64,000 bases of DNA from IMGVR_UViG_3300037294_000266:62001-126000; one strand, 5' to 3'; counted from the stretch's first letter, positions 15,748 to 58,889 are shown. Notes: generated by a model from the sequence alone, not told the origin. A program made the numbers and translations.

Positions 15748-16446
15748 TCAACCTACTTGTTCAAGAGAAGGCTGGTCGCAATGACCGACAGTGCCCACGT
15801 TAACAGGCATGCCCGCAGAAGCATAGGTCTTGCCGAAAACATTGTCCGTGTAGAACGGTTCACAGCGATACATGCGATCAACCGAATTGACACAATGGAT
15901 AGGGCGAACAAAACGAGCGAACTCGAAAGCCGTCAGATCGAATCGCTGTTGGATGGACAGGCGGTTATACGGCACGGGCGCTGGCACCGATGGCATGTTA
16001 CGCATGGCGATGTCCAACGTTTCAACCGCAGCGCAATCGTCTGGTAAATCCAGGGTGTCCAACCAATGCATTTCTCGGCAGCTCAGTTGAGTCACTGCAC
16101 GGTGCCGGTTCAATGCCGAGGAGATGTCATGAGGGGTGTGGAGCGAGATGAACATCAGATCGTTAGCTGACGTGTAAGCGCCTTCGTCCTTGCCACGTTC
16201 GGCGTCAACCGCAGCCATAGCCCGCCATAACGTGTTCCACGAGCCAGAAGGCCGGATGCGGAAGATCTTGACATGTTTGCCAGAGAGACCGACGGTCTTC
16301 TTGTTCAACTCACTCCCAGCAATCAGGAAGAACTCCTTAACGTTAGGGTTCTTCTCGATCACCTGAATAGCTTGTTCGTAGTCATTGACGAACACGATAG
16401 CGTGGCTCAGCAGTGACAGAGGGACTGTGCTATTAACATCTTTCAT
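15748..16446 (-). CDS. Hypothetical protein
   Basis: 232 aa, AGGA SD. Confidence 0.7.
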   Translation of the reverse strand: MKDVNSTVPLSLLSHAIVFVNDYEQAIQVIEKNPNVKEFFLIAGSELNKKTVGLSGKHVKIFRIRPSGSWNTLWRAMAAVDAERGKDEGAYTSANDLMFISLHTPHDISSALNRHRAVTQLSCREMHWLDTLDLPDDCAAVETLDIAMRNMPSVPAPVPYNRLSIQQRFDLTAFEFARFVRPIHCVNSVDRMYRCEPFYTDNVFGKTYASAGMPVNVGTVGHCDQPSLEQVG

Positions 16447-51059: not shown

Positions 51060-51977
51060 TTACGGCGTGTACTCAGATAGGCCATTGTTGACGCCAACTT
51101 CCGTGACTCCACCGAAAACATACATTTTGTTACCGTAAACCACAGCTGCCATTGAATGGTGGGTATTTGGACCGGCTGGTTTATCTACTATATCCCATGC
51201 ATTCGTAACGGGATCGTATACGTAGATAATAGTGGCAGTTACAGAGCCGCCTCCATAAACATATAACTTACCGTTTATCGAAAAGGCGGTGTGGTACTGT
51301 AGGGCGTTTGGCATGCCTGCTAAATCGGTCCATTTATTCGTGAGTGGATCATACATGGACAATCCGTACACGACGCTTCCCGTACTATTTCGACCACCGG
51401 TCACGTACATCTTATCACCGACTACCGCAGCGGCATGGTAACGACGTGGAGTACTTGAGGCGAGAGCCTTCCAAGTGTCGGTAGCGGGGGTGTATTCGTA
51501 CAGCGATCCTAATGCGTTGCCGGCATTACCAGCACCGCCGTAAACATATAACTTACCGTTGATAGCCACTGCGGAATGAGATTGTACTCCTACCGGGTAC
51601 GGGTTCTTAGTAGTCCAGGTATCCGATGATGGGTCGTAGACATCAAGACCGTTGGAAGTGCCGTATCCGTTATAACCGCCGAGAACATAAATCTTGTTAT
51701 TGATTGTACAGGCGGTGTGACGTATTCTTTTTAAAGCTGACTTTCTTCCACGCCACGTACCGTTAAGAAAATTGTATTCATAATGTAAATCTAGGACGGG
51801 TCCATTCACTGTACTCGACCCTCCGTAAACGTAGATACAATCTTCGGAAACGGCTGCTGAATACCAATGACTTTTAAATGACGTTGGAGCACTGCTTTTA
51901 GATATCCATGTACTAATCGCAACCGATAACTTACTTCGTTCAAAAGCGTGAGCTGCAGGTAATAGACTGGCTAACAT
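51060..51977 (-). CDS. Kelch-repeat beta-propeller protein
   Basis: Six repeats of the form H-x-A-x-x-x-N-G-K-I/L-Y-V-x-GG...Y-D-P-x-T-x-x-W. Confidence 0.92.
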   Translation of the reverse strand: MLASLLPAAHAFERSKLSVAISTWISKSSAPTSFKSHWYSAAVSEDCIYVYGGSSTVNGPVLDLHYEYNFLNGTWRGRKSALKRIRHTACTINNKIYVLGGYNGYGTSNGLDVYDPSSDTWTTKNPYPVGVQSHSAVAINGKLYVYGGAGNAGNALGSLYEYTPATDTWKALASSTPRRYHAAAVVGDKMYVTGGRNSTGSVVYGLSMYDPLTNKWTDLAGMPNALQYHTAFSINGKLYVYGGGSVTATIIYVYDPVTNAWDIVDKPAGPNTHHSMAAVVYGNKMYVFGGVTEVGVNNGLSEYTP

Positions 51978-53812: not shown

Positions 53813-53995
53813 TGGCGGGAAATTGAGGATTTGAACCCCCTTCTCCAGACGTCTTTTCTTACCGTTCGGATTCCTGATTAACCCACTGGTCAGGTGGGAT
53901 TTCGCTTGGCCTCAGAACCACCTGAGACGAGCTACTGCCCTATGCACCGATAAGAGTACCGCCTGTCGCATTAAACATGTCTATGCTAAGATCCC
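53813..53995 (-). ncRNA. 183-nt tRNA-like RNA with pseudoknot-containing domain replacing the anticodon arm
   Basis: Acceptor GGGA/TCCC with G-CCA end, D-stem GCAT/ATGC, T-loop TTCAAAT, extended stem CAGGCG/CGTCTG and TCTTATCG/CGGTAAGA, pseudoknot CCCAC/GTGGG with CCTGA/TCAGG. The first G is the G of a TATG motif. Confidence 0.7.
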
Positions 53996-54206: not shown

Positions 54207-54653
54207 TTAAAGGCCGCACCAACCAACTTTAGTGCCGCCAGAATAAGGGACTGCGAGTCCTCGAGCAATAAGCTCATCTCCAACGACTCTGCCGTCTACG
54301 ACCACAGTGGCCAGTAAGCGAAAGTACTTATCACGATCGAGGTTGGTCAGTGTCACTCGTTTACCATTGGCAATCATTTCACCGACAGCGTCACGAGCTT
54401 TTATGGCCAGTATTTTCTCTGCATCACGTTCAGCCTTTGTGGCACAGTCACTCCGCATCTCTGGTGTATCGATGCCATTTACTCTGACTGACAACCGATC
54501 TCCAAAGACATCAGGCAGGTACGGAATCTGGACAGTGAGTGTGTCACCATCGTAGATACTGACAACGTCCTCAGGAATGAGTTTTATCTCTTCAAGAGGA
54601 TACGCTTGAACGGTGCCACATGCCAGCAGAAAACTAAGAAGTAAAATACGCAT
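54207..54653 (-). CDS. Secreted thermonuclease (SNase family)
   Basis: Signal peptide, YDGDT, VRVNGIDTPE, DKYFRLLA, LIARGLA. Confidence 0.9.
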   Translation of the reverse strand: MRILLLSFLLACGTVQAYPLEEIKLIPEDVVSIYDGDTLTVQIPYLPDVFGDRLSVRVNGIDTPEMRSDCATKAERDAEKILAIKARDAVGEMIANGKRVTLTNLDRDKYFRLLATVVVDGRVVGDELIARGLAVPYSGGTKVGWCGL

Positions 54654-54797: not shown

Positions 54798-54885
54798 TGG
54801 CGGAAGCGGTGAGATTCGAACTCACGGACCCCGAAGAGTCGACAGTTTTCAAGACTGTAGGATTCAACCGCTCTCCCACGCTTCC
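54798..54885 (-). tRNA. trnS: tRNA-Ser(UGA)
   Basis: Complete type II cloverleaf GGAAGCG...ACAGTCT-TGA-AAACTGT...long variable arm...GTTCGAATC...CGCTTCC-G-CCA. Confidence 0.97.
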
Positions 54886-54890
54886 AATAC

Positions 54891-54963
54891 AGGTGCTGAT
54901 ACCGGGAATCGAACCCGAGTCCTCCGTCACCAACAGGTGCGCCTTCTCTGCGCCACTATCTAC
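54891..54963 (-). ncRNA. Degenerate tRNA-like element (intact T-arm, weak anticodon arm, ACCT end)
   Basis: D-stem GCGC/GCGC, T-arm TCGGG-TTCGATT-CCCGG, acceptor 6/7 bp. Confidence 0.6.
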
Positions 54964-54965
54964 CA

Positions 54966-55039
54966 AGTAGATAGACAGGACTTTAACCTGCGACCTCCTG
55001 TCTCGTTTACCGGGACACTACCAGCTGAGCTATAACGGC
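54966..55039 (-). ncRNA. Degenerate tRNA-like element with non-matching acceptor strands
   Basis: TAGCTCAGCTGGTAG D-region, T-arm GCAGG-TTAAAGT-CCTGT. Its 3' strand CTATCTAC pairs with the next element rather than its own 5' end. Confidence 0.55.
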
Positions 55040-55044
55040 GAAAT

Positions 55045-55133
55045 AGGCGGAGAGCCACCTTAGACTTCCTGATGTGCCCGACGGGAGAGCACGGAAGTAA
55101 CGGGTTAGATTAGCACCCTCCAAGGGGCTCTCC
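55045..55133 (-). ncRNA. Y-shaped RNA with long acceptor-like stem and G-CCT tail
   Basis: GGAGAGCC/GGCTCTCC plus CCTTGG/CTAAGG, hairpins GGGT/ACCC and ACTTCC-GTGC/GCAC-GGAAGT. Confidence 0.55.
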
Positions 55134-55137
55134 TGTT

Positions 55138-55258
55138 TGGTCCAAGTATCCGGGTTCGAACCGGTGGAGTATAACATCCGATCGACGTGCGACCATAGTC
55201 GCGTTCGTCATCAGACATCACTCCCAGAGCCACCTCCCAAACCCGATCATAATCTTGG
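55138..55258 (-). ncRNA. 121-nt tRNA-like RNA with long irregular stem replacing the anticodon arm
   Basis: Acceptor CCAAG/CTTGG with A-CCA end, T-arm CCGG-TTCGAAC-CCGG, about 24-bp interrupted stem capped by GCGAC-TATG-GTCGC. Confidence 0.7.
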
Positions 55259-55440
55259 GACTAAGGCCGAATTACACGGCGAGCACGGATCTCTGTACTT
55301 GTACACTAGGCGCGAGCGTTTACGACCATCGAGTTCTTTTGCTTCCGAACGCTAAAGGTAAGGGGCCTCGACGTCATCTACTCGCATTAATCGGTTCTCT
55401 CACTGCGGATCTCTACATATATCAGCAGTGTTAATATTTT

Positions 55441-56721: not shown

Positions 56722-56763
56722 GTAACATCCGATCAGAGTAATGGTACTCTGATCGGATGTTAC
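56722..56763. terminator. 19-bp perfect stem-loop
   Basis: GTAACATCCGATCAGAGTA-ATGG-TACTCTGATCGGATGTTAC. Confidence 0.7.
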
Positions 56764-56820
56764 GTCGAGCGCGGATCTTTATACGAGTCATGTCATCTAC
56801 TCACATTGACTTTATAGCCT

Positions 56821-57090: not shown

Positions 57091-57250
57091 ACCACTTCCT
57101 CAGACATAAATAACTACACGTTAGCTTCCATTGACCCACAGGCTTTTTCCGTCATCCAGGATCTCTCCTACACTGACGCCTATCCACAGGATTCACCTTA
57201 CGAGGGTTACTTTGGTTTGTGCTGTCATCGCTCGCGTGTATCGCAGTGCA

Positions 57251-57397
57251 CTACGATTCTTTACCGAATATCCTATCCATTGCCAGACGAAGTCTTTCTT
57301 CATCTTCTGGGGTAGGAGTAGGAAGGGGCTTTCCAGGGCAGGCGTGAATGCCACAGATATTACATATCGGACAACACTGCCTTTCGTCTTCTAACAT
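57251..57397 (-). CDS. Small Cys-rich protein (48 aa)
   Basis: MLEDERQCCPICNICGIHAC. The SD GGGGG is supplied by the 3' acceptor strand of the upstream tRNA-like element. Confidence 0.5.
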   Translation of the reverse strand: MLEDERQCCPICNICGIHACPGKPLPTPTPEDEERLRLAMDRIFGKES

Positions 57398-57491
57398 GAT
57401 ACCCCCTACAGGATTCGAACCCATGCTCGCGCAGTATCCGAATGCGAATTTGGACACTACCCAGCTCTAACCAACTGAGACTTAAAGAGGC
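57397..57491 (-). ncRNA. tRNA-like RNA with 7-bp anticodon stem and 12-nt loop
   Basis: Acceptor GCCTCTT/AGGGGGT, CTCAGTTGGTTAGAG D-arm, AGTGTCC/GGATACT, T-loop TTCGAAT, A-TCA end. Confidence 0.65.
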
Positions 57492-57504
57492 TTAACAGAA
57501 ATCG

Positions 57505-57825
57505 TGGGTTGATGACCTGAAGCGGTCTTAGATGTTTTCACATCACCCGTCAACCTACTGGGCTTGCCGTTACCATTTCGCCCGAATGGTCAAGGGGATC
57601 TGTCATACGCTTCTAGATCTTGGGCAGGGCGGTGACTAAACAGTTCTATTGTTCAGACACATCCTTCTCGGGGTGCGGCTTTGGACTTCCCTGATCGCAC
57701 GTCTCCAATAGACTAGAGGATGCGGTCGTAGGGTTTCAGATAAGAGATCAGACTGTGCAGTCCGGTGCCTAGGTGAGTAGGGCACTGTCTTGATCAATCA
57801 TTCCCCAGCTGGTTGAGGGGGAATT
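57505..57825 (-). ncRNA. Run of structured non-coding elements
   Basis: GGTTGA/TCAACC junction with GATGT-GAAA-ACATC and GACC/GGTC, plus ACCATT/AATGGT, GTGCC/GGCAC, GACTG/CAGTC and ATTCCCC/GGGGAAT. No ORF of 60 aa or more in the track. Confidence 0.5.
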
Positions 57826-57828
57826 AAA

Positions 57829-57910
57829 CACCTCTAGCGAGTCTCGAAGTCGCACACCGTCGATTAGAATGGCTACCAATCGACTGTCCTACCAATTGGA
57901 CGATAGAGGT
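57829..57910 (-). ncRNA. tRNA-like RNA with 7-bp anticodon stem and 12-nt loop
   Basis: Perfect acceptor ACCTCTA/TAGAGGT, D-arm GTCC-AATTGGTA-GGAC, GTCGATT/AATCGAC, T-loop TTCGAGA. No encoded CCA. Confidence 0.75.
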
Positions 57911-57924
57911 ATAAACGCTGTATG

Positions 57925-58050
57925 TAAGTATGATGGGATTCAAACCCACGTACGCTTTGGTATAGCCAATGGACTGGCACCTCGGCGTTCTAGTCCAACC
58001 GTCCGCGTTACCGGACATTTCACCCTTAAGCCAGGCTCAGGAACATACTC
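57925..58050 (-). ncRNA. 126-nt tRNA-like RNA with three hairpins between the D- and T-arms
   Basis: Acceptor GAGTATG/CATACTT, D-stem CCT/AGG, hairpins GTCC/GGAC, GGACT/AGTCC and TTGG/CCAA, T-arm GTGGG-TTTGAAT-CCCAT. Confidence 0.7.
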
Positions 58051-58060
58051 ACACACAAAC

Positions 58061-58157: not shown

Positions 58158-58270
58158 TCGAGAACGCGGGCCGGCGCCGCGTATGGCTGCCTCATTGGGC
58201 TGCCGATCATAGTGCGCGCTGCCACTAGGGCTGCCGCTGATCCGGTGCGGAGACGAACCCGCGTTCTCGA
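58158..58270. ncRNA. Multibranch hairpin with 13-bp closing stem and four GGCAGC motifs
   Basis: TCGAGAACGCGGG/CCCGCGTTCTCGA. GCTGCC on the + strand at 58186, 58199, 58218 and 58230. Confidence 0.65.
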
Positions 58271-58321: not shown

Positions 58322-58858
58322 TTAAGCTGTCGTATAGCGTTTACCGGAGTGTATGTTCTCTACAACACCCCTACTAATTCCAAACATTCTGGCTATTTCA
58401 CGCTGAGAATGTTTACCCTTTAATGAGAGAACTCTATTCGCCTCTTCTTGAGTAAGAACAGCATTATGACTATCGGCTCCGCGACGTTGTTTCAATAAAC
58501 CATTTTCTTTTGCATGGTCCATATTACCTTGCCGAGTAGTCCACTCTAATTGAGTGTAACCATTTTTGGCTTTATCGCAGAAAACATGATTGACTTCAAG
58601 ATCATCACTTTCTCTTCCAACAAAGGCTTTGGCAACCTGTACATGGATTTTTATACAGATGTTCTTACCCTTCCTACCACCTATTTTACTAGCATGGGTC
58701 AGGTAGCCATTATGATTCAATGTCTGAGACAGTATTTTACCTGTCCTGCGACTTCTCAAGGTGCCTTTCGAACCAATATCAAAGTGTTCTGGATAATCCG
58801 GACACGGAACAAATATTTCATCTTCGTCGTCAAGTGTCCAGCCAACTAATTTACTCAT
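58322..58858 (-). CDS. Free-standing NUMOD4-HNH homing endonuclease with C-terminal HTH
   Basis: IGSKGTLRS, IHVQVAKAF, EVNHVFCDKAKN...LEWTTRQGNMDHA, SQREIARMFGISRG. Start at 58858 with GGAGG. Confidence 0.85.
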   Translation of the reverse strand: MSKLVGWTLDDEDEIFVPCPDYPEHFDIGSKGTLRSRRTGKILSQTLNHNGYLTHASKIGGRKGKNICIKIHVQVAKAFVGRESDDLEVNHVFCDKAKNGYTQLEWTTRQGNMDHAKENGLLKQRRGADSHNAVLTQEEANRVLSLKGKHSQREIARMFGISRGVVENIHSGKRYTTA

Positions 58859-58865
58859 GTTGACC

Positions 58866-58889
58866 TCCATCTGTTTATTGTCAGATGGA
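58866..58889 (-). promoter_or_regulatory. Hairpin occluding the HNH ribosome-binding site
   Basis: TCCATCTG-ACAATAAA-CAGATGGA overlaps GGAGG, with TACATTA immediately upstream. Confidence 0.6.

What the first reader, a model, noticed from the sequence alone, without database searches (positions are those of the whole stretch)
55138..55258. CCA-ended mimic with a ~24-bp arm instead of an anticodon
Canonical TTCGAAC T-loop and ACCA end, no clear D-stem, and a long G.U-rich interrupted helix. The topology is like the tRNA-like domain of tmRNA without the mRNA part.
Basis: seen in the sequence. Interest (0 to 1): 0.7.

Follow-up and report, generated by a model that had tools for sequence, protein, structure and literature searches.

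The report
Phage tRNA-derived CCA-ended hairpin element
A 121-base stretch in the tRNA gene cluster of a giant bacteriophage ends like a tRNA (T-loop, acceptor strand, ACCA) but has a long hairpin, copied from a nearby repeat, where the anticodon arm should be; it is most likely a non-decoding tRNA-derived small RNA or relic, not a tmRNA-like mimic, and nothing yet shows that it is made or used.

Summary
The described features are real, but they read on the minus strand (55258->55138). This is the strand of the neighbouring tRNA genes of a 266.6-kb phiKZ-like jumbo phage from a salt-lake metagenome.

What is there:
- a 4-bp T stem with a UUCGAAC loop;
- a 7-nt acceptor 3' strand, then A73 and an encoded CCA;
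- a 5-bp acceptor helix;
- no D arm;
- a 23-bp interrupted arm with 6 G.U pairs, stable only as minus-strand RNA (-52.6 against -34.6 kcal/mol).

It is neither a tRNA nor a tmRNA by any test. Rfam gives no hit even at E<=10. ARAGORN gives no call, even after 43,320 trial deletions. It lacks G3.U70 and a tag frame.

The predicted ground state is a rod that buries the T loop. Forcing the T arm costs 9.5 kcal/mol, against 0-1.3 for the neighbouring tRNAs.

The arm and the 5' part are diverged copies of a hairpin-plus-leader repeat 1.5 kb upstream, and pairing is kept through wobble and compensatory changes. No homolog exists in three related phages, and no RNA data could be found.

Best reading: a lineage-specific chimera of a tRNA 3' end and a hairpin repeat. 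Its closest architectural match is T4 species 1 RNA (rnaC), and it is probably cut out by tRNA-processing enzymes. Function is unproven. Interest is moderate to low.

The parts
55138..55258 (-). The whole element X (121 nt): CCAAG...long arm...T-arm-like...CUUGG-ACCA
   Evidence: Sequence. Fold -52.6 kcal/mol, z -4.58. The opposite strand folds at -34.6 only.
55138..55146 (-). Last five nt of the acceptor 3' strand (CUUGG, 55146-55142), then discriminator A and encoded CCA (55141-55138)
   Evidence: Pair probabilities of 1-5/113-117 are at least 0.99.
55254..55258 (-). Acceptor-like 5' strand CCAAG. It pairs with 55142-55146. C1-G72.
   Evidence: A 5-bp complement is chance-level on its own. 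This stretch aligns with the loop of the hp repeat.
55150..55164 (-). T-arm-like module CCGG-UUCGAAC-CCGG
   Evidence: Motif scan. It is not formed in the predicted ensemble.
55168..55225 (-). Long interrupted arm: 23 bp, 6 G.U, bulged G76, UAUG end loop
   Evidence: Arm alone: -24.9 kcal/mol on the minus strand against -14.7 on the plus strand. It is a paralogue of hairpin hp.
55236..55246 (-). Segment UCGGGUUUGGG, which pairs with the T loop and 3' T stem (55150-55160) in the minimum-energy rod
   Evidence: pair probabilities 0.7-1.0.
55276..55292 (-). Leader motif AGATCCGTGCTCGCCGT, 17 nt upstream of X. It is one of only two copies in the genome.
56722..56778 (-). Paralogous locus: the same 17-nt motif (56778-56762) followed by a perfect 17-bp palindromic hairpin hp (56763-56722), just upstream of the 423-aa ORF
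55040..55137 (-). Structured spacer J between X and the next tRNA-like gene. It shares the 10-mer AGGUGGCUCU with X.
   Evidence: The shared 10-mer is read from the sequence.

Best explanation
X is a lineage-specific chimeric non-coding element, not a decoding tRNA and not a tmRNA.

**What it is made of.** It joins a tRNA 3'-end module (T-arm sequence, 7-nt acceptor 3' strand, A73, encoded CCA) to two diverged copies of a local leader-plus-hairpin repeat. One copy supplies the long arm. The other supplies the 5' part, including the strand that pairs with the acceptor end.

**How it most likely works (inferred).**
- It is transcribed with the minus-strand tRNA cluster.
- In both the rod and the cloverleaf-like fold it presents a helix ending in a single-stranded ACCA. 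This is the feature bacterial RNase P recognises in tRNAs and in hairpin substrates such as pre-4.5S RNA.
- It would therefore be cut at its 5' end and trimmed at its 3' end like its tRNA neighbours.
- The product would be a stable RNA of about 121 nt, as for T4 species 1 RNA.
- With its would-be anticodon nucleotides buried in a helix, it cannot decode.

**Role.** If it has one, it is most likely punctuation or stabilisation of the polycistronic tRNA transcript, or that of a small stable RNA of still unknown function.

**Shown:** the sequence anatomy, the strand-specific structure, the paralogy with hp, and non-membership of tRNA and tmRNA.

**Inferred:** transcription, RNase P processing, stability and role.
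For: **Context.** X lies on the tRNA strand inside a cluster of tRNA and tRNA-like genes of a jumbo phage. Three of the four genome-wide 'T arm + acceptor + CCA' motifs lie within 1.4 kb here, against about 1 expected genome-wide.

**Structure.** The fold has z = -4.58 and is strand-specific: -52.6 against -34.6 kcal/mol.

**Chimeric origin.**
- The 12-mer GATCGGATGTTA, the arm's 3' strand, occurs only in X and in both arms of hairpin hp.
- The 17-nt leader motif occurs only at these two loci.
- The hp hairpin aligns with the leader plus X nucleotides 1-20.

**Pairing maintained.** Of 17 aligned pairs between hp and the arm, 8 are the same, 5 changed on one side (all to G.U wobble), 3 changed on both sides with the pair kept, 1 is a bulge, and none is broken.

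**Precedent.** T4 rnaC lies in the T4 tRNA cluster and has long hairpins plus a canonical T arm. It is an expressed RNA of unknown function (PMC9697503). Bacterial RNase P cleaves hairpin substrates with an RCCA end, including pre-4.5S RNA and the phage M3 and C4 RNAs (PMC11143913).

**Persistence.** X is identical in a second strain from another study, while the tRNA genes on both sides were swapped or deleted.
Against: - No expression data exist; no RNA run was listed.
- No homolog exists in the three related phages or contigs that share the syntenic slot or the upstream gene. There is therefore no between-species covariation and no sign of long-term conservation.
- The two strains differ by only about 0.5% around X, so identity there says little.
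- The cluster is visibly decaying or rearranging. The neighbouring tRNA-like gene is a deletion chimera. X could therefore be debris.
- The acceptor helix is only 5 bp, which is chance-level.
- The hp hairpin carries two pair-breaking changes in the other strain, so selection on this hairpin family is not strict.
- The pair comparison with hp depends on the homology assignment. Positions 14-17 may not be homologous.
Confidence: 0.42

Rival explanations
1. Non-functional relic. A tRNA gene lost its 5' half and anticodon arm by recombination with, or insertion of, the local hairpin repeat. X is transcribed only passively, if at all, and does nothing.
For: - The cluster is in flux between two strains that are otherwise about 99.5% identical around X: a 206-nt indel lies inside the neighbouring tRNA-like gene, tRNA-Ser is replaced, and a 240-nt block holding two tRNA-like genes is swapped.
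- X is absent from all relatives.
- X fails every tRNA test.
- Its T loop is buried in the predicted fold.
Against: - The arm keeps all its pairs relative to its paralogue, through wobble and compensatory changes, and is stable on one strand only.
- The CCA end and T loop are intact.
- X is retained unchanged while its neighbours were exchanged.
Confidence: 0.3
2. Decoy or sponge. The CCA-ended helix titrates a host factor that recognises tRNA acceptor ends or T arms. Candidates are a defence toxin that modifies or cleaves tRNA 3' ends, the CCA-adding enzyme, or RNase P.
For: - X has a tRNA-like 3' end with encoded CCA but no usable anticodon.
- Sibling tRNA-like genes in the same cluster also have masked or expanded anticodon loops.
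- The phage encodes no CCA-adding enzyme or RNA ligase of its own.
Against: This is purely inferential. X is not conserved in relatives. No partner protein has been identified. A literature search found no described case of this kind.
Confidence: 0.1
3. Hairpin regulatory or processing site, for example a double-strand-specific RNase site or a protein-binding site shared with the hp hairpin in the leader of the 423-aa gene. On this reading the tRNA-like 3' end is incidental.
For: - The arm and its leader motif are paralogous to hp, which sits 10 nt before a start codon and has no tRNA features.
- The minimum-energy structure is one long rod.
Against: - The T-loop, acceptor and CCA motif clusters with real tRNAs on the same strand.
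- The 17-nt motif occurs only twice in the genome, so it is not a general signal.
- The hp hairpin has pair-breaking variants in the second strain.
Confidence: 0.1
4. Insertion- or intron-containing tRNA that is matured to a decoding tRNA. It would read as Pro-CGG if the 34 nt before AUCGGAU are removed, or as Gln-CUG if the 34 nt after GUCUGA are removed.
For: - The spacing from the base of the arm to the end is exactly tRNA-like: a 5-bp stem, a 5-nt variable loop, the T arm, a 7-nt acceptor strand, A73 and CCA.
- C1-G72 with A73 and the loop letters UCGGAU match phage tRNA-Pro(CGG) genes (L030).
- A sibling gene at 57829-57910 becomes a standard tRNA after any 9-nt loop deletion.
- Huge phages are reported to carry tRNAs with 'enigmatic introns' (doi 10.1101/356790).
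Against: - None of 43,320 combinations of one deletion in the D region and one in the arm gives an ARAGORN tRNA.
- There is no D arm.
- There is no bulge-helix-bulge motif at either junction (read from the sequence and fold).
- The insert is far too short for a group I intron.
- The phage has no RtcB or RNA ligase gene.
- The letters UCGGAUGUUA belong to the hp repeat, which is not a tRNA.
Confidence: 0.05
5. One reading: a mimic of the tmRNA tRNA-like domain that is aminoacylated and binds SmpB and EF-Tu.
For: The topology on paper matches: acceptor helix, T arm, no D stem, and a long helix in the place of tmRNA helix P2.
Against: - No tmRNA-family hit.
- Position 3-70 is A-U instead of G.U.
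- The -1 base is C, so there is no His-type G-1.
- The would-be Pro anticodon bases are paired in the arm.
- The T arm is disfavoured by 9.5 kcal/mol.
- There is no tag frame and no second piece.
Confidence: 0.03

Closest known systems
Bacteriophage T4 species 1 RNA (rnaC; NC_000866 70908-71046)
   Same: It is encoded inside the phage tRNA gene cluster on the tRNA strand and is of similar size (139 against 121 nt). It has a canonical T-arm sequence next to a short terminal helix, and long hairpins in place of the D and anticodon arms. It is a stable RNA whose function is still unknown.
   Different: - There is no sequence similarity beyond 11 nt of the T arm.
- The rnaC T stem forms with probability of about 1.0 in the model, while that of X is about 0.
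- rnaC has two side hairpins, X has one.
- CCA is encoded in X but not in rnaC, whose gene ends ...CGUUUCGUA.
- rnaC is conserved among T4-like phages, whereas X is not found in any relative.
tRNA-like domain of tmRNA (SsrA)
   Same: Both have an acceptor helix with a CCA end, a T arm, no D stem, and a long helix leaving the core.
   Different: X has no G3.U70, no tag reading frame, no pseudoknots and no second piece. No tmRNA covariance model and no ARAGORN tmRNA search matches it.
tRNA genes with short 'enigmatic introns' or insertions in huge phages (Lak megaphages; doi 10.1101/356790)
   Same: These are phage tRNA-cluster genes that standard tRNA finders miss because extra nucleotides sit in or near the anticodon loop. 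Sibling genes in this window behave this way.
   Different: X cannot be turned into a recognisable tRNA by removing insertions, and it lacks a D arm.
Hairpin-type RNase P substrates (pre-4.5S RNA, phage phi80 M3 RNA, P1/P7 C4 RNA)
   Same: Each is a long, imperfect hairpin whose terminal helix is followed by a single-stranded RCCA-like tail. This is the minimal recognition feature for bacterial RNase P.
   Different: There is no sequence relation. Processing of X has not been tested.
t-elements of plant mitochondria (tRNA-like processing signals)
   Same: They are partial tRNA-like structures, without decoding function, that serve as RNase P/Z cleavage signals in polycistronic transcripts (title and abstract of PMC1920247, seen).
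   Different: They belong to a different domain of life and have no encoded CCA. The comparison is by analogy only.

Membership tests
tRNA (Rfam RF00005 / ARAGORN) | Covariance-model or ARAGORN detection | tested here: not met
   Rfam gives no hit at the gathering threshold, at E<=10 on 5.5 kb, or at E<=10 on 281 nt. ARAGORN gives no call at default settings or with introns allowed at a lowered threshold.
tRNA (Rfam RF00005 / ARAGORN) | T arm: 5-bp stem and a 7-nt UUCRANY loop | tested here: inconclusive
   The sequence fits, with 4 bp plus an A.A and the loop UUCGAAC. The model gives a pair probability of about 0, and forcing the arm costs 9.5 kcal/mol, against 0-1.3 for the neighbouring tRNAs.
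tRNA (Rfam RF00005 / ARAGORN) | 7-bp acceptor stem, discriminator base and CCA | tested here: inconclusive
   Five contiguous pairs are followed by two mismatches, then A73 and an encoded CCA. A 5-bp complement is expected by chance in about two thirds of cases.
tRNA (Rfam RF00005 / ARAGORN) | D arm | tested here: not met
   The 28 nt between position 9 and the arm hold no D stem-loop. In the constrained fold there is at best a 4-bp hairpin with a 4-nt loop.
tRNA (Rfam RF00005 / ARAGORN) | Anticodon arm with a 7-nt loop | tested here: not met
   It is replaced by a 23-bp arm ending in a 4-nt loop.
tmRNA (RF00023 and the alpha, beta, cyano and mitochondrial variants) | Match to a tmRNA model, or an ARAGORN tmRNA call (one-piece or permuted) | tested here: not met
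   The only weak tmRNA hit (15.4 bits) is the T arm of a different gene at 54901-54928.
tmRNA (RF00023 and the alpha, beta, cyano and mitochondrial variants) | G3.U70 alanine identity pair in the acceptor stem | tested here: not met
   Position 3-70 is A-U.
tmRNA (RF00023 and the alpha, beta, cyano and mitochondrial variants) | Resume codon, tag reading frame and pseudoknots, in the same or a second piece | tested here: not met
   The arm is a closed hairpin. The 100 nt downstream hold no complementary acceptor strand.
tmRNA (RF00023 and the alpha, beta, cyano and mitochondrial variants) | Aminoacylation and binding of SmpB and EF-Tu | not testable with these tools
   This needs biochemistry.
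T4 species 1 RNA (rnaC)-type stable tRNA-like RNA | Encoded within the phage tRNA cluster on the same strand | tested here: met
T4 species 1 RNA (rnaC)-type stable tRNA-like RNA | Sequence homology to rnaC | tested here: not met
   Only 11 nt of the T arm match.
T4 species 1 RNA (rnaC)-type stable tRNA-like RNA | Terminal helix plus T arm, with long hairpins instead of D and anticodon arms | tested here: inconclusive
   The architecture can be drawn this way for both RNAs. The T arm is predicted to form in rnaC but not in X.
T4 species 1 RNA (rnaC)-type stable tRNA-like RNA | Accumulates as a discrete stable RNA, processed by RNase P | not testable with these tools
   No RNA run was listed for this phage.
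Intron-containing tRNA | Removing the insert restores a recognisable tRNA | tested here: not met
   None of 43,320 deletion variants is called. The positive control, the gene at 57829-57910, is called after any 9-nt deletion in its loop.
Intron-containing tRNA | A splicing signal (bulge-helix-bulge or a group I core) and a ligase | tested here: not met
   No 3-nt bulges flank either junction (read from the fold). There is no group I hit. The phage has no RtcB or RNA ligase gene.

The most novel reading that the evidence does not exclude
X is one member of a set of 'anticodon-masked' tRNA mimics that this jumbo phage makes on purpose. The other members lie at 57829-57910, about 57395-57491, about 57925-58051 and about 53815-53951. 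Each keeps the acceptor and T end that host tRNA enzymes recognise, but hides or replaces the anticodon loop with a helix. Two roles are conceivable. They could be decoys against host defences that attack tRNAs. Or they could be precursors carrying a new kind of short tRNA insert, removed by a mechanism not yet known in bacteria or phages.
Probability: 0.1. Interest if true: 0.75.

Novelty: new variant of a known kind. Interest (0 to 1): 0.35.

Why it matters
Phage tRNA clusters have been known for fifty years to hold tRNA-like stable RNAs whose function is still unknown (T4 species 1 and 2). Huge phages have been reported to carry tRNAs with unexplained insertions.

This window adds a clear example of how such an element can arise. 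A tRNA 3' end is fused to a locally duplicated hairpin, inside a cluster that exchanges cassettes between nearly identical strains.

If X is expressed and precisely processed, it would be a compact natural substrate for studying what tRNA-processing enzymes need. It would also be a candidate non-coding effector. If it is not expressed, it is a datable snapshot of tRNA gene decay in a jumbo phage.

Either way, it warns that 'T loop + CCA' alone does not make a tmRNA-like mimic.

Tried and rejected
**Detectors**
- Rfam at three sensitivities and ARAGORN in three modes found nothing at X.

**Homolog searches**
- blastn against 50,697 phage records found only tRNA-Pro/Lys-like similarity to the neighbouring gene, not to X.
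- Two IUPAC pattern scans of IMG/VR for X's 3' end found nothing or only ordinary tRNAs. One further scan was wasted on a miscounted spacer.
- Relatives found through proteins have the syntenic tRNA slot or the upstream gene, but not X. These were Pseudomonas phage pPa_SNUABM_DT01, IMGVR_UViG_3300014063_000001, and an 81%-identical homolog of the upstream ORF on contig L013.
- A metagenome scan returned only two short contigs that do not reach the region.

**Covariation from strains**
- The second strain is identical across X.

**Expression**
- No RNA run was listed.

**Intron hypothesis**
- The exhaustive deletion scan was negative.

**Promoter ideas**
- TATATGTA and TATGTAGA are not enriched in the genome.
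- Sigma-70-like promoter and terminator scans are at shuffle level.

**Coding potential**
- The three small ORFs overlapping or next to X have no PHROG hits.

**Mobile hairpin family**
- The hairpin repeat has only the two local copies.

**Integrase att-site remnant**
- The 5' acceptor strand of the tRNA-like gene at 57395-57491 does not match X's 3' strand (read from the sequences).

**Literature**
- A search for described phage tRNA-like decoys found none.

Full report
**Where it lies.** The window is bases 62001-126000 of a 266,646-bp virus record that CheckV rates complete. Its large proteins hit PHROG families. The 973-aa protein, which matches phrog_3248, is 72% identical to its counterpart in Pseudomonas phage pPa_SNUABM_DT01, which is annotated with phiKZ-type internal head proteins. 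More distant homologs occur in about 290 jumbo phages. The DNA is held by a salt-lake metagenome run, and a near-identical strain is held by sediment metagenome runs from another study.

**The observation.** The finding reads on the minus strand, from 55258 to 55138. That is the strand of the two tRNAs that ARAGORN calls just downstream, Ser-UGA at 54798-54885 and a weak 'Thr-GGU' at 54892-54963. It is also the strand of an Rfam tRNA at 57829-57910. Numbering X from its 5' end, the parts are as follows.
- Nucleotides 1-5 (CCAAG) pair with 113-117 (CUUGG).
- Nucleotides 118-121 are ACCA.
- Nucleotides 95-109 read CCGG-UUCGAAC-CCGG.
- There is no D stem.
- Nucleotides 34-91 form a 23-bp arm with six G.U pairs, one bulge and two internal loops.

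The fold is -52.6 kcal/mol with z = -4.58. The complementary strand folds at only -34.6, the level of shuffled sequence. For the arm alone the values are -24.9 and -14.7. The structure therefore belongs to an RNA of tRNA sense.

**Is it more than chance?** A scan for 'T arm + 7 nt + N + CCA' finds four sites in the genome, where Markov simulations give about one. Three of the four lie between 53.8 and 55.2 kb of the window on the minus strand. The tRNA-like 3' end is thus not a chance match in this context. The 5-bp acceptor complement, by contrast, is what two thirds of simulated hits also have.

**What it is not.**
- Rfam has no match for X at the gathering threshold, at E<=10 over 5.5 kb, or at E<=10 over 281 nt.
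- ARAGORN, which also searches for one-piece and permuted tmRNA, calls nothing. It still calls nothing with introns allowed and a lowered threshold.
- I removed every combination of 0-15 nt from the D region and 30-39 nt from the arm. None of the 43,320 variants is called a tRNA. The neighbouring gene at 57829-57910 is called after any 9-nt deletion in its loop.
- For tmRNA, position 3-70 is A-U rather than G.U, there is no tag frame, and no second piece lies downstream.
- The phage carries no RtcB, CCA-adding enzyme or RNA ligase gene.

**The fold as drawn is doubtful.** In the minimum-energy structure, nucleotides 13-23 (UCGGGUUUGGG) pair with the T loop and the 3' T stem (99-109). This makes one long rod ending in ACCA. 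The T-stem pairs have probability of about 0. Forcing the T arm costs 9.5 kcal/mol.

Real tRNAs are often mispredicted by such models, so I calibrated on the neighbours. The same forcing costs 1.3 kcal/mol for tRNA-Ser, 0.0 for the 'Thr' gene and -0.9 for the gene at 57829-57910. In T4 rnaC the T stem has probability of about 1.0. X has no D loop to stabilise a T-loop fold, so the rod is the more likely ground state. Co-transcriptional folding could still trap the local T hairpin.

**Origin.**
- The 3' strand of the arm contains GATCGGATGTTA. This 12-mer occurs three times in the genome: in X, and in both arms of a perfect 17-bp palindromic hairpin (hp, 56722-56763) that ends 10 nt before the start codon of the 423-aa ORF.
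- A 17-nt motif, AGATCCGYGCTCGMCGT, occurs exactly twice in the genome. One copy ends 17 nt upstream of X and the other directly abuts hp.
- The word GAGTAGATGAC is also shared further upstream. The hp hairpin aligns, at 23 of 37 positions, with the leader plus X nucleotides 1-20.
- X is therefore built from two diverged copies of this repeat plus a tRNA 3' end.

Across the 17 aligned pairs of hp and the arm, 8 are unchanged. Five changed on one side, always to a G.U wobble that holds only on the minus strand. Three changed on both sides with the pair kept, one became a bulge, and none is broken. This is the only covariation-type evidence available. It depends on the homology assignment.

Some features could also be read as remnants of a tRNA-Pro(CGG): the letters UCGGAU, the 5-bp stem, the 5-nt variable loop, and C1-G72 with A73. 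Phage tRNA-Pro(CGG) genes have the loop UUCGGAU. But the same letters belong to hp, which is not a tRNA, so I do not rely on this.

**Relatives.** DT01 and IMGVR_UViG_3300014063_000001 share flanking genes and have a tRNA cluster in the same slot. A contig encoding an 81%-identical homolog of the upstream ORF was also recovered. None contains X.

The second strain is identical across 55025-55350. It differs in three ways nearby.
- It has 206 extra letters inside the neighbouring tRNA-like gene.
- It has a different tRNA-Ser.
- It has a different 243-nt block in place of 57821-58060.

The cluster evolves by cassette exchange and deletion. X has persisted through that, but only over a very short evolutionary distance.

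**Comparison with known systems.** The best architectural match is T4 species 1 RNA (rnaC). It is a 139-nt RNA encoded in the T4 tRNA cluster, with a short terminal helix, long hairpins and a canonical T arm. It is expressed late and still has no known function. There is no sequence homology beyond the T arm.

The rod form resembles the hairpin-type RNase P substrates, whose recognition rests on a helix followed by RCCA. Huge phages have been reported to carry tRNAs with unexplained inserts. Sibling genes in this window fit that description, but X does not.

**Verdict.** The tmRNA-like interpretation is not supported beyond a resemblance on paper. The most likely reading (about 0.4) is a lineage-specific chimera of a tRNA 3' end and a hairpin repeat. 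It cannot decode and is probably excised by tRNA-processing enzymes as a small stable RNA. An inert relic is nearly as likely (about 0.3). No expression data could be found.

Noticed in passing
window 58160-58268 (-); L001 33315-33425 (-); L008 14672-14785 (+): A structured RNA of about 110 nt with repeated GGCAGCC words is conserved in this phage and in two relatives (71% mean column identity). The predicted structure has 35 pairs, 10 of them with compensatory changes. In the two relatives the outer stem is followed by ACC and sits directly upstream of the first tRNA of the cluster. Rfam has no match.
   Followed up: partly
window 57829-57910 (-): This is a good tRNA (Rfam 41.5 bits) whose anticodon loop has 16 nt instead of 7. 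Removing any 9 nt from the loop gives a standard ARAGORN tRNA. It reads as Arg-UCU, Ser-GCU or Thr-GGU, depending on where the 9 nt are taken out.
   Followed up: partly
window ~57395-57491 (-): This tRNA-like gene has a 7-bp G.U-rich acceptor stem, a near-canonical D arm with one extra U, and a good T arm. In place of the anticodon arm there is a 13-bp hairpin with a UCGC tetraloop. ARAGORN with introns allowed reads it as Pro-CGG plus 13 nt. In the second strain U4.G69 becomes C4-G69.
   Followed up: partly
window ~57925-58051 (-) and ~53815-53951 (-): Two further tRNA-like genes are missed by all detectors. The first has a 7-bp acceptor stem (GAGUAUG/CAUACUU), a class II-type D arm, the T arm GUGGG-UUUGAAU-CCCAU, and about 35-40 extra nt. 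The second ends in a T arm, then AUUUCCC-G-CCA, and is about 135 nt long.
   Followed up: no
window 54892-55039 (-); L008 16114-16265 (+): The tRNA-like gene at 55039-54967 has acceptor strands that do not match each other. Its 3' strand instead forms a perfect 8-bp hairpin (CUAUCUAC-UUG-GUAGAUAG) with the start of the next gene. This looks like interleaved or permuted tRNA halves. A similar nested arrangement occurs in the relative G001. The second strain has 206 extra letters at 55024, so the window copy is probably a deletion chimera.
   Followed up: partly
window 54798-54885, 57821-58060 and beyond 58305: The two strains are about 99.5% identical around X but exchange whole tRNA cassettes. 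tRNA-Ser differs at about 24 positions. A 240-nt block with two tRNA-like genes is replaced by 243 other letters. Where the window has an HNH/NUMOD4 endonuclease gene (58322-58870), the other strain continues with another tRNA.
   Followed up: partly
window 57139-57217 (-); L008 ~15785-15850 (+): A non-coding block is conserved between this phage and G001 (71% identity, E = 5e-5). It contains GUARCCCUCGUAAGGUGAA...GGAAAAAGCCUG. The surrounding 230 nt hold about ten times more strain differences than the flanks. Its identity is unknown.
   Followed up: no
window 57492-57828 (-): About 330 nt of apparently non-coding sequence lie between two tRNA-like genes. There is no Rfam match.
   Followed up: no
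L013 10653-10749 (+): An unrelated phage contig, which carries an 81% homolog of the ORF upstream of X, has a tRNA-like gene with a perfect 7-bp acceptor stem, a T arm, an encoded CCA, and about 20 extra nt in the anticodon/variable region. ARAGORN calls it Met-CAU plus 23 nt only when introns are allowed.
   Followed up: no
L001 32822-32893 (-): DT01 holds an unannotated tRNA-like gene (GAGGACG...CGUCCUC-A-ACC, with a good T arm) that overlaps the end of an annotated CDS. ARAGORN calls it Lys-CUU only at a lowered threshold.
   Followed up: no
window 51060-51977 (-) and 54207-54653 (-): The phage encodes a 305-aa Kelch-repeat beta-propeller protein (Pfam Kelch_1, E = 1e-50). It also encodes a staphylococcal-nuclease-like endonuclease directly downstream of the tRNA cluster.
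   Followed up: no
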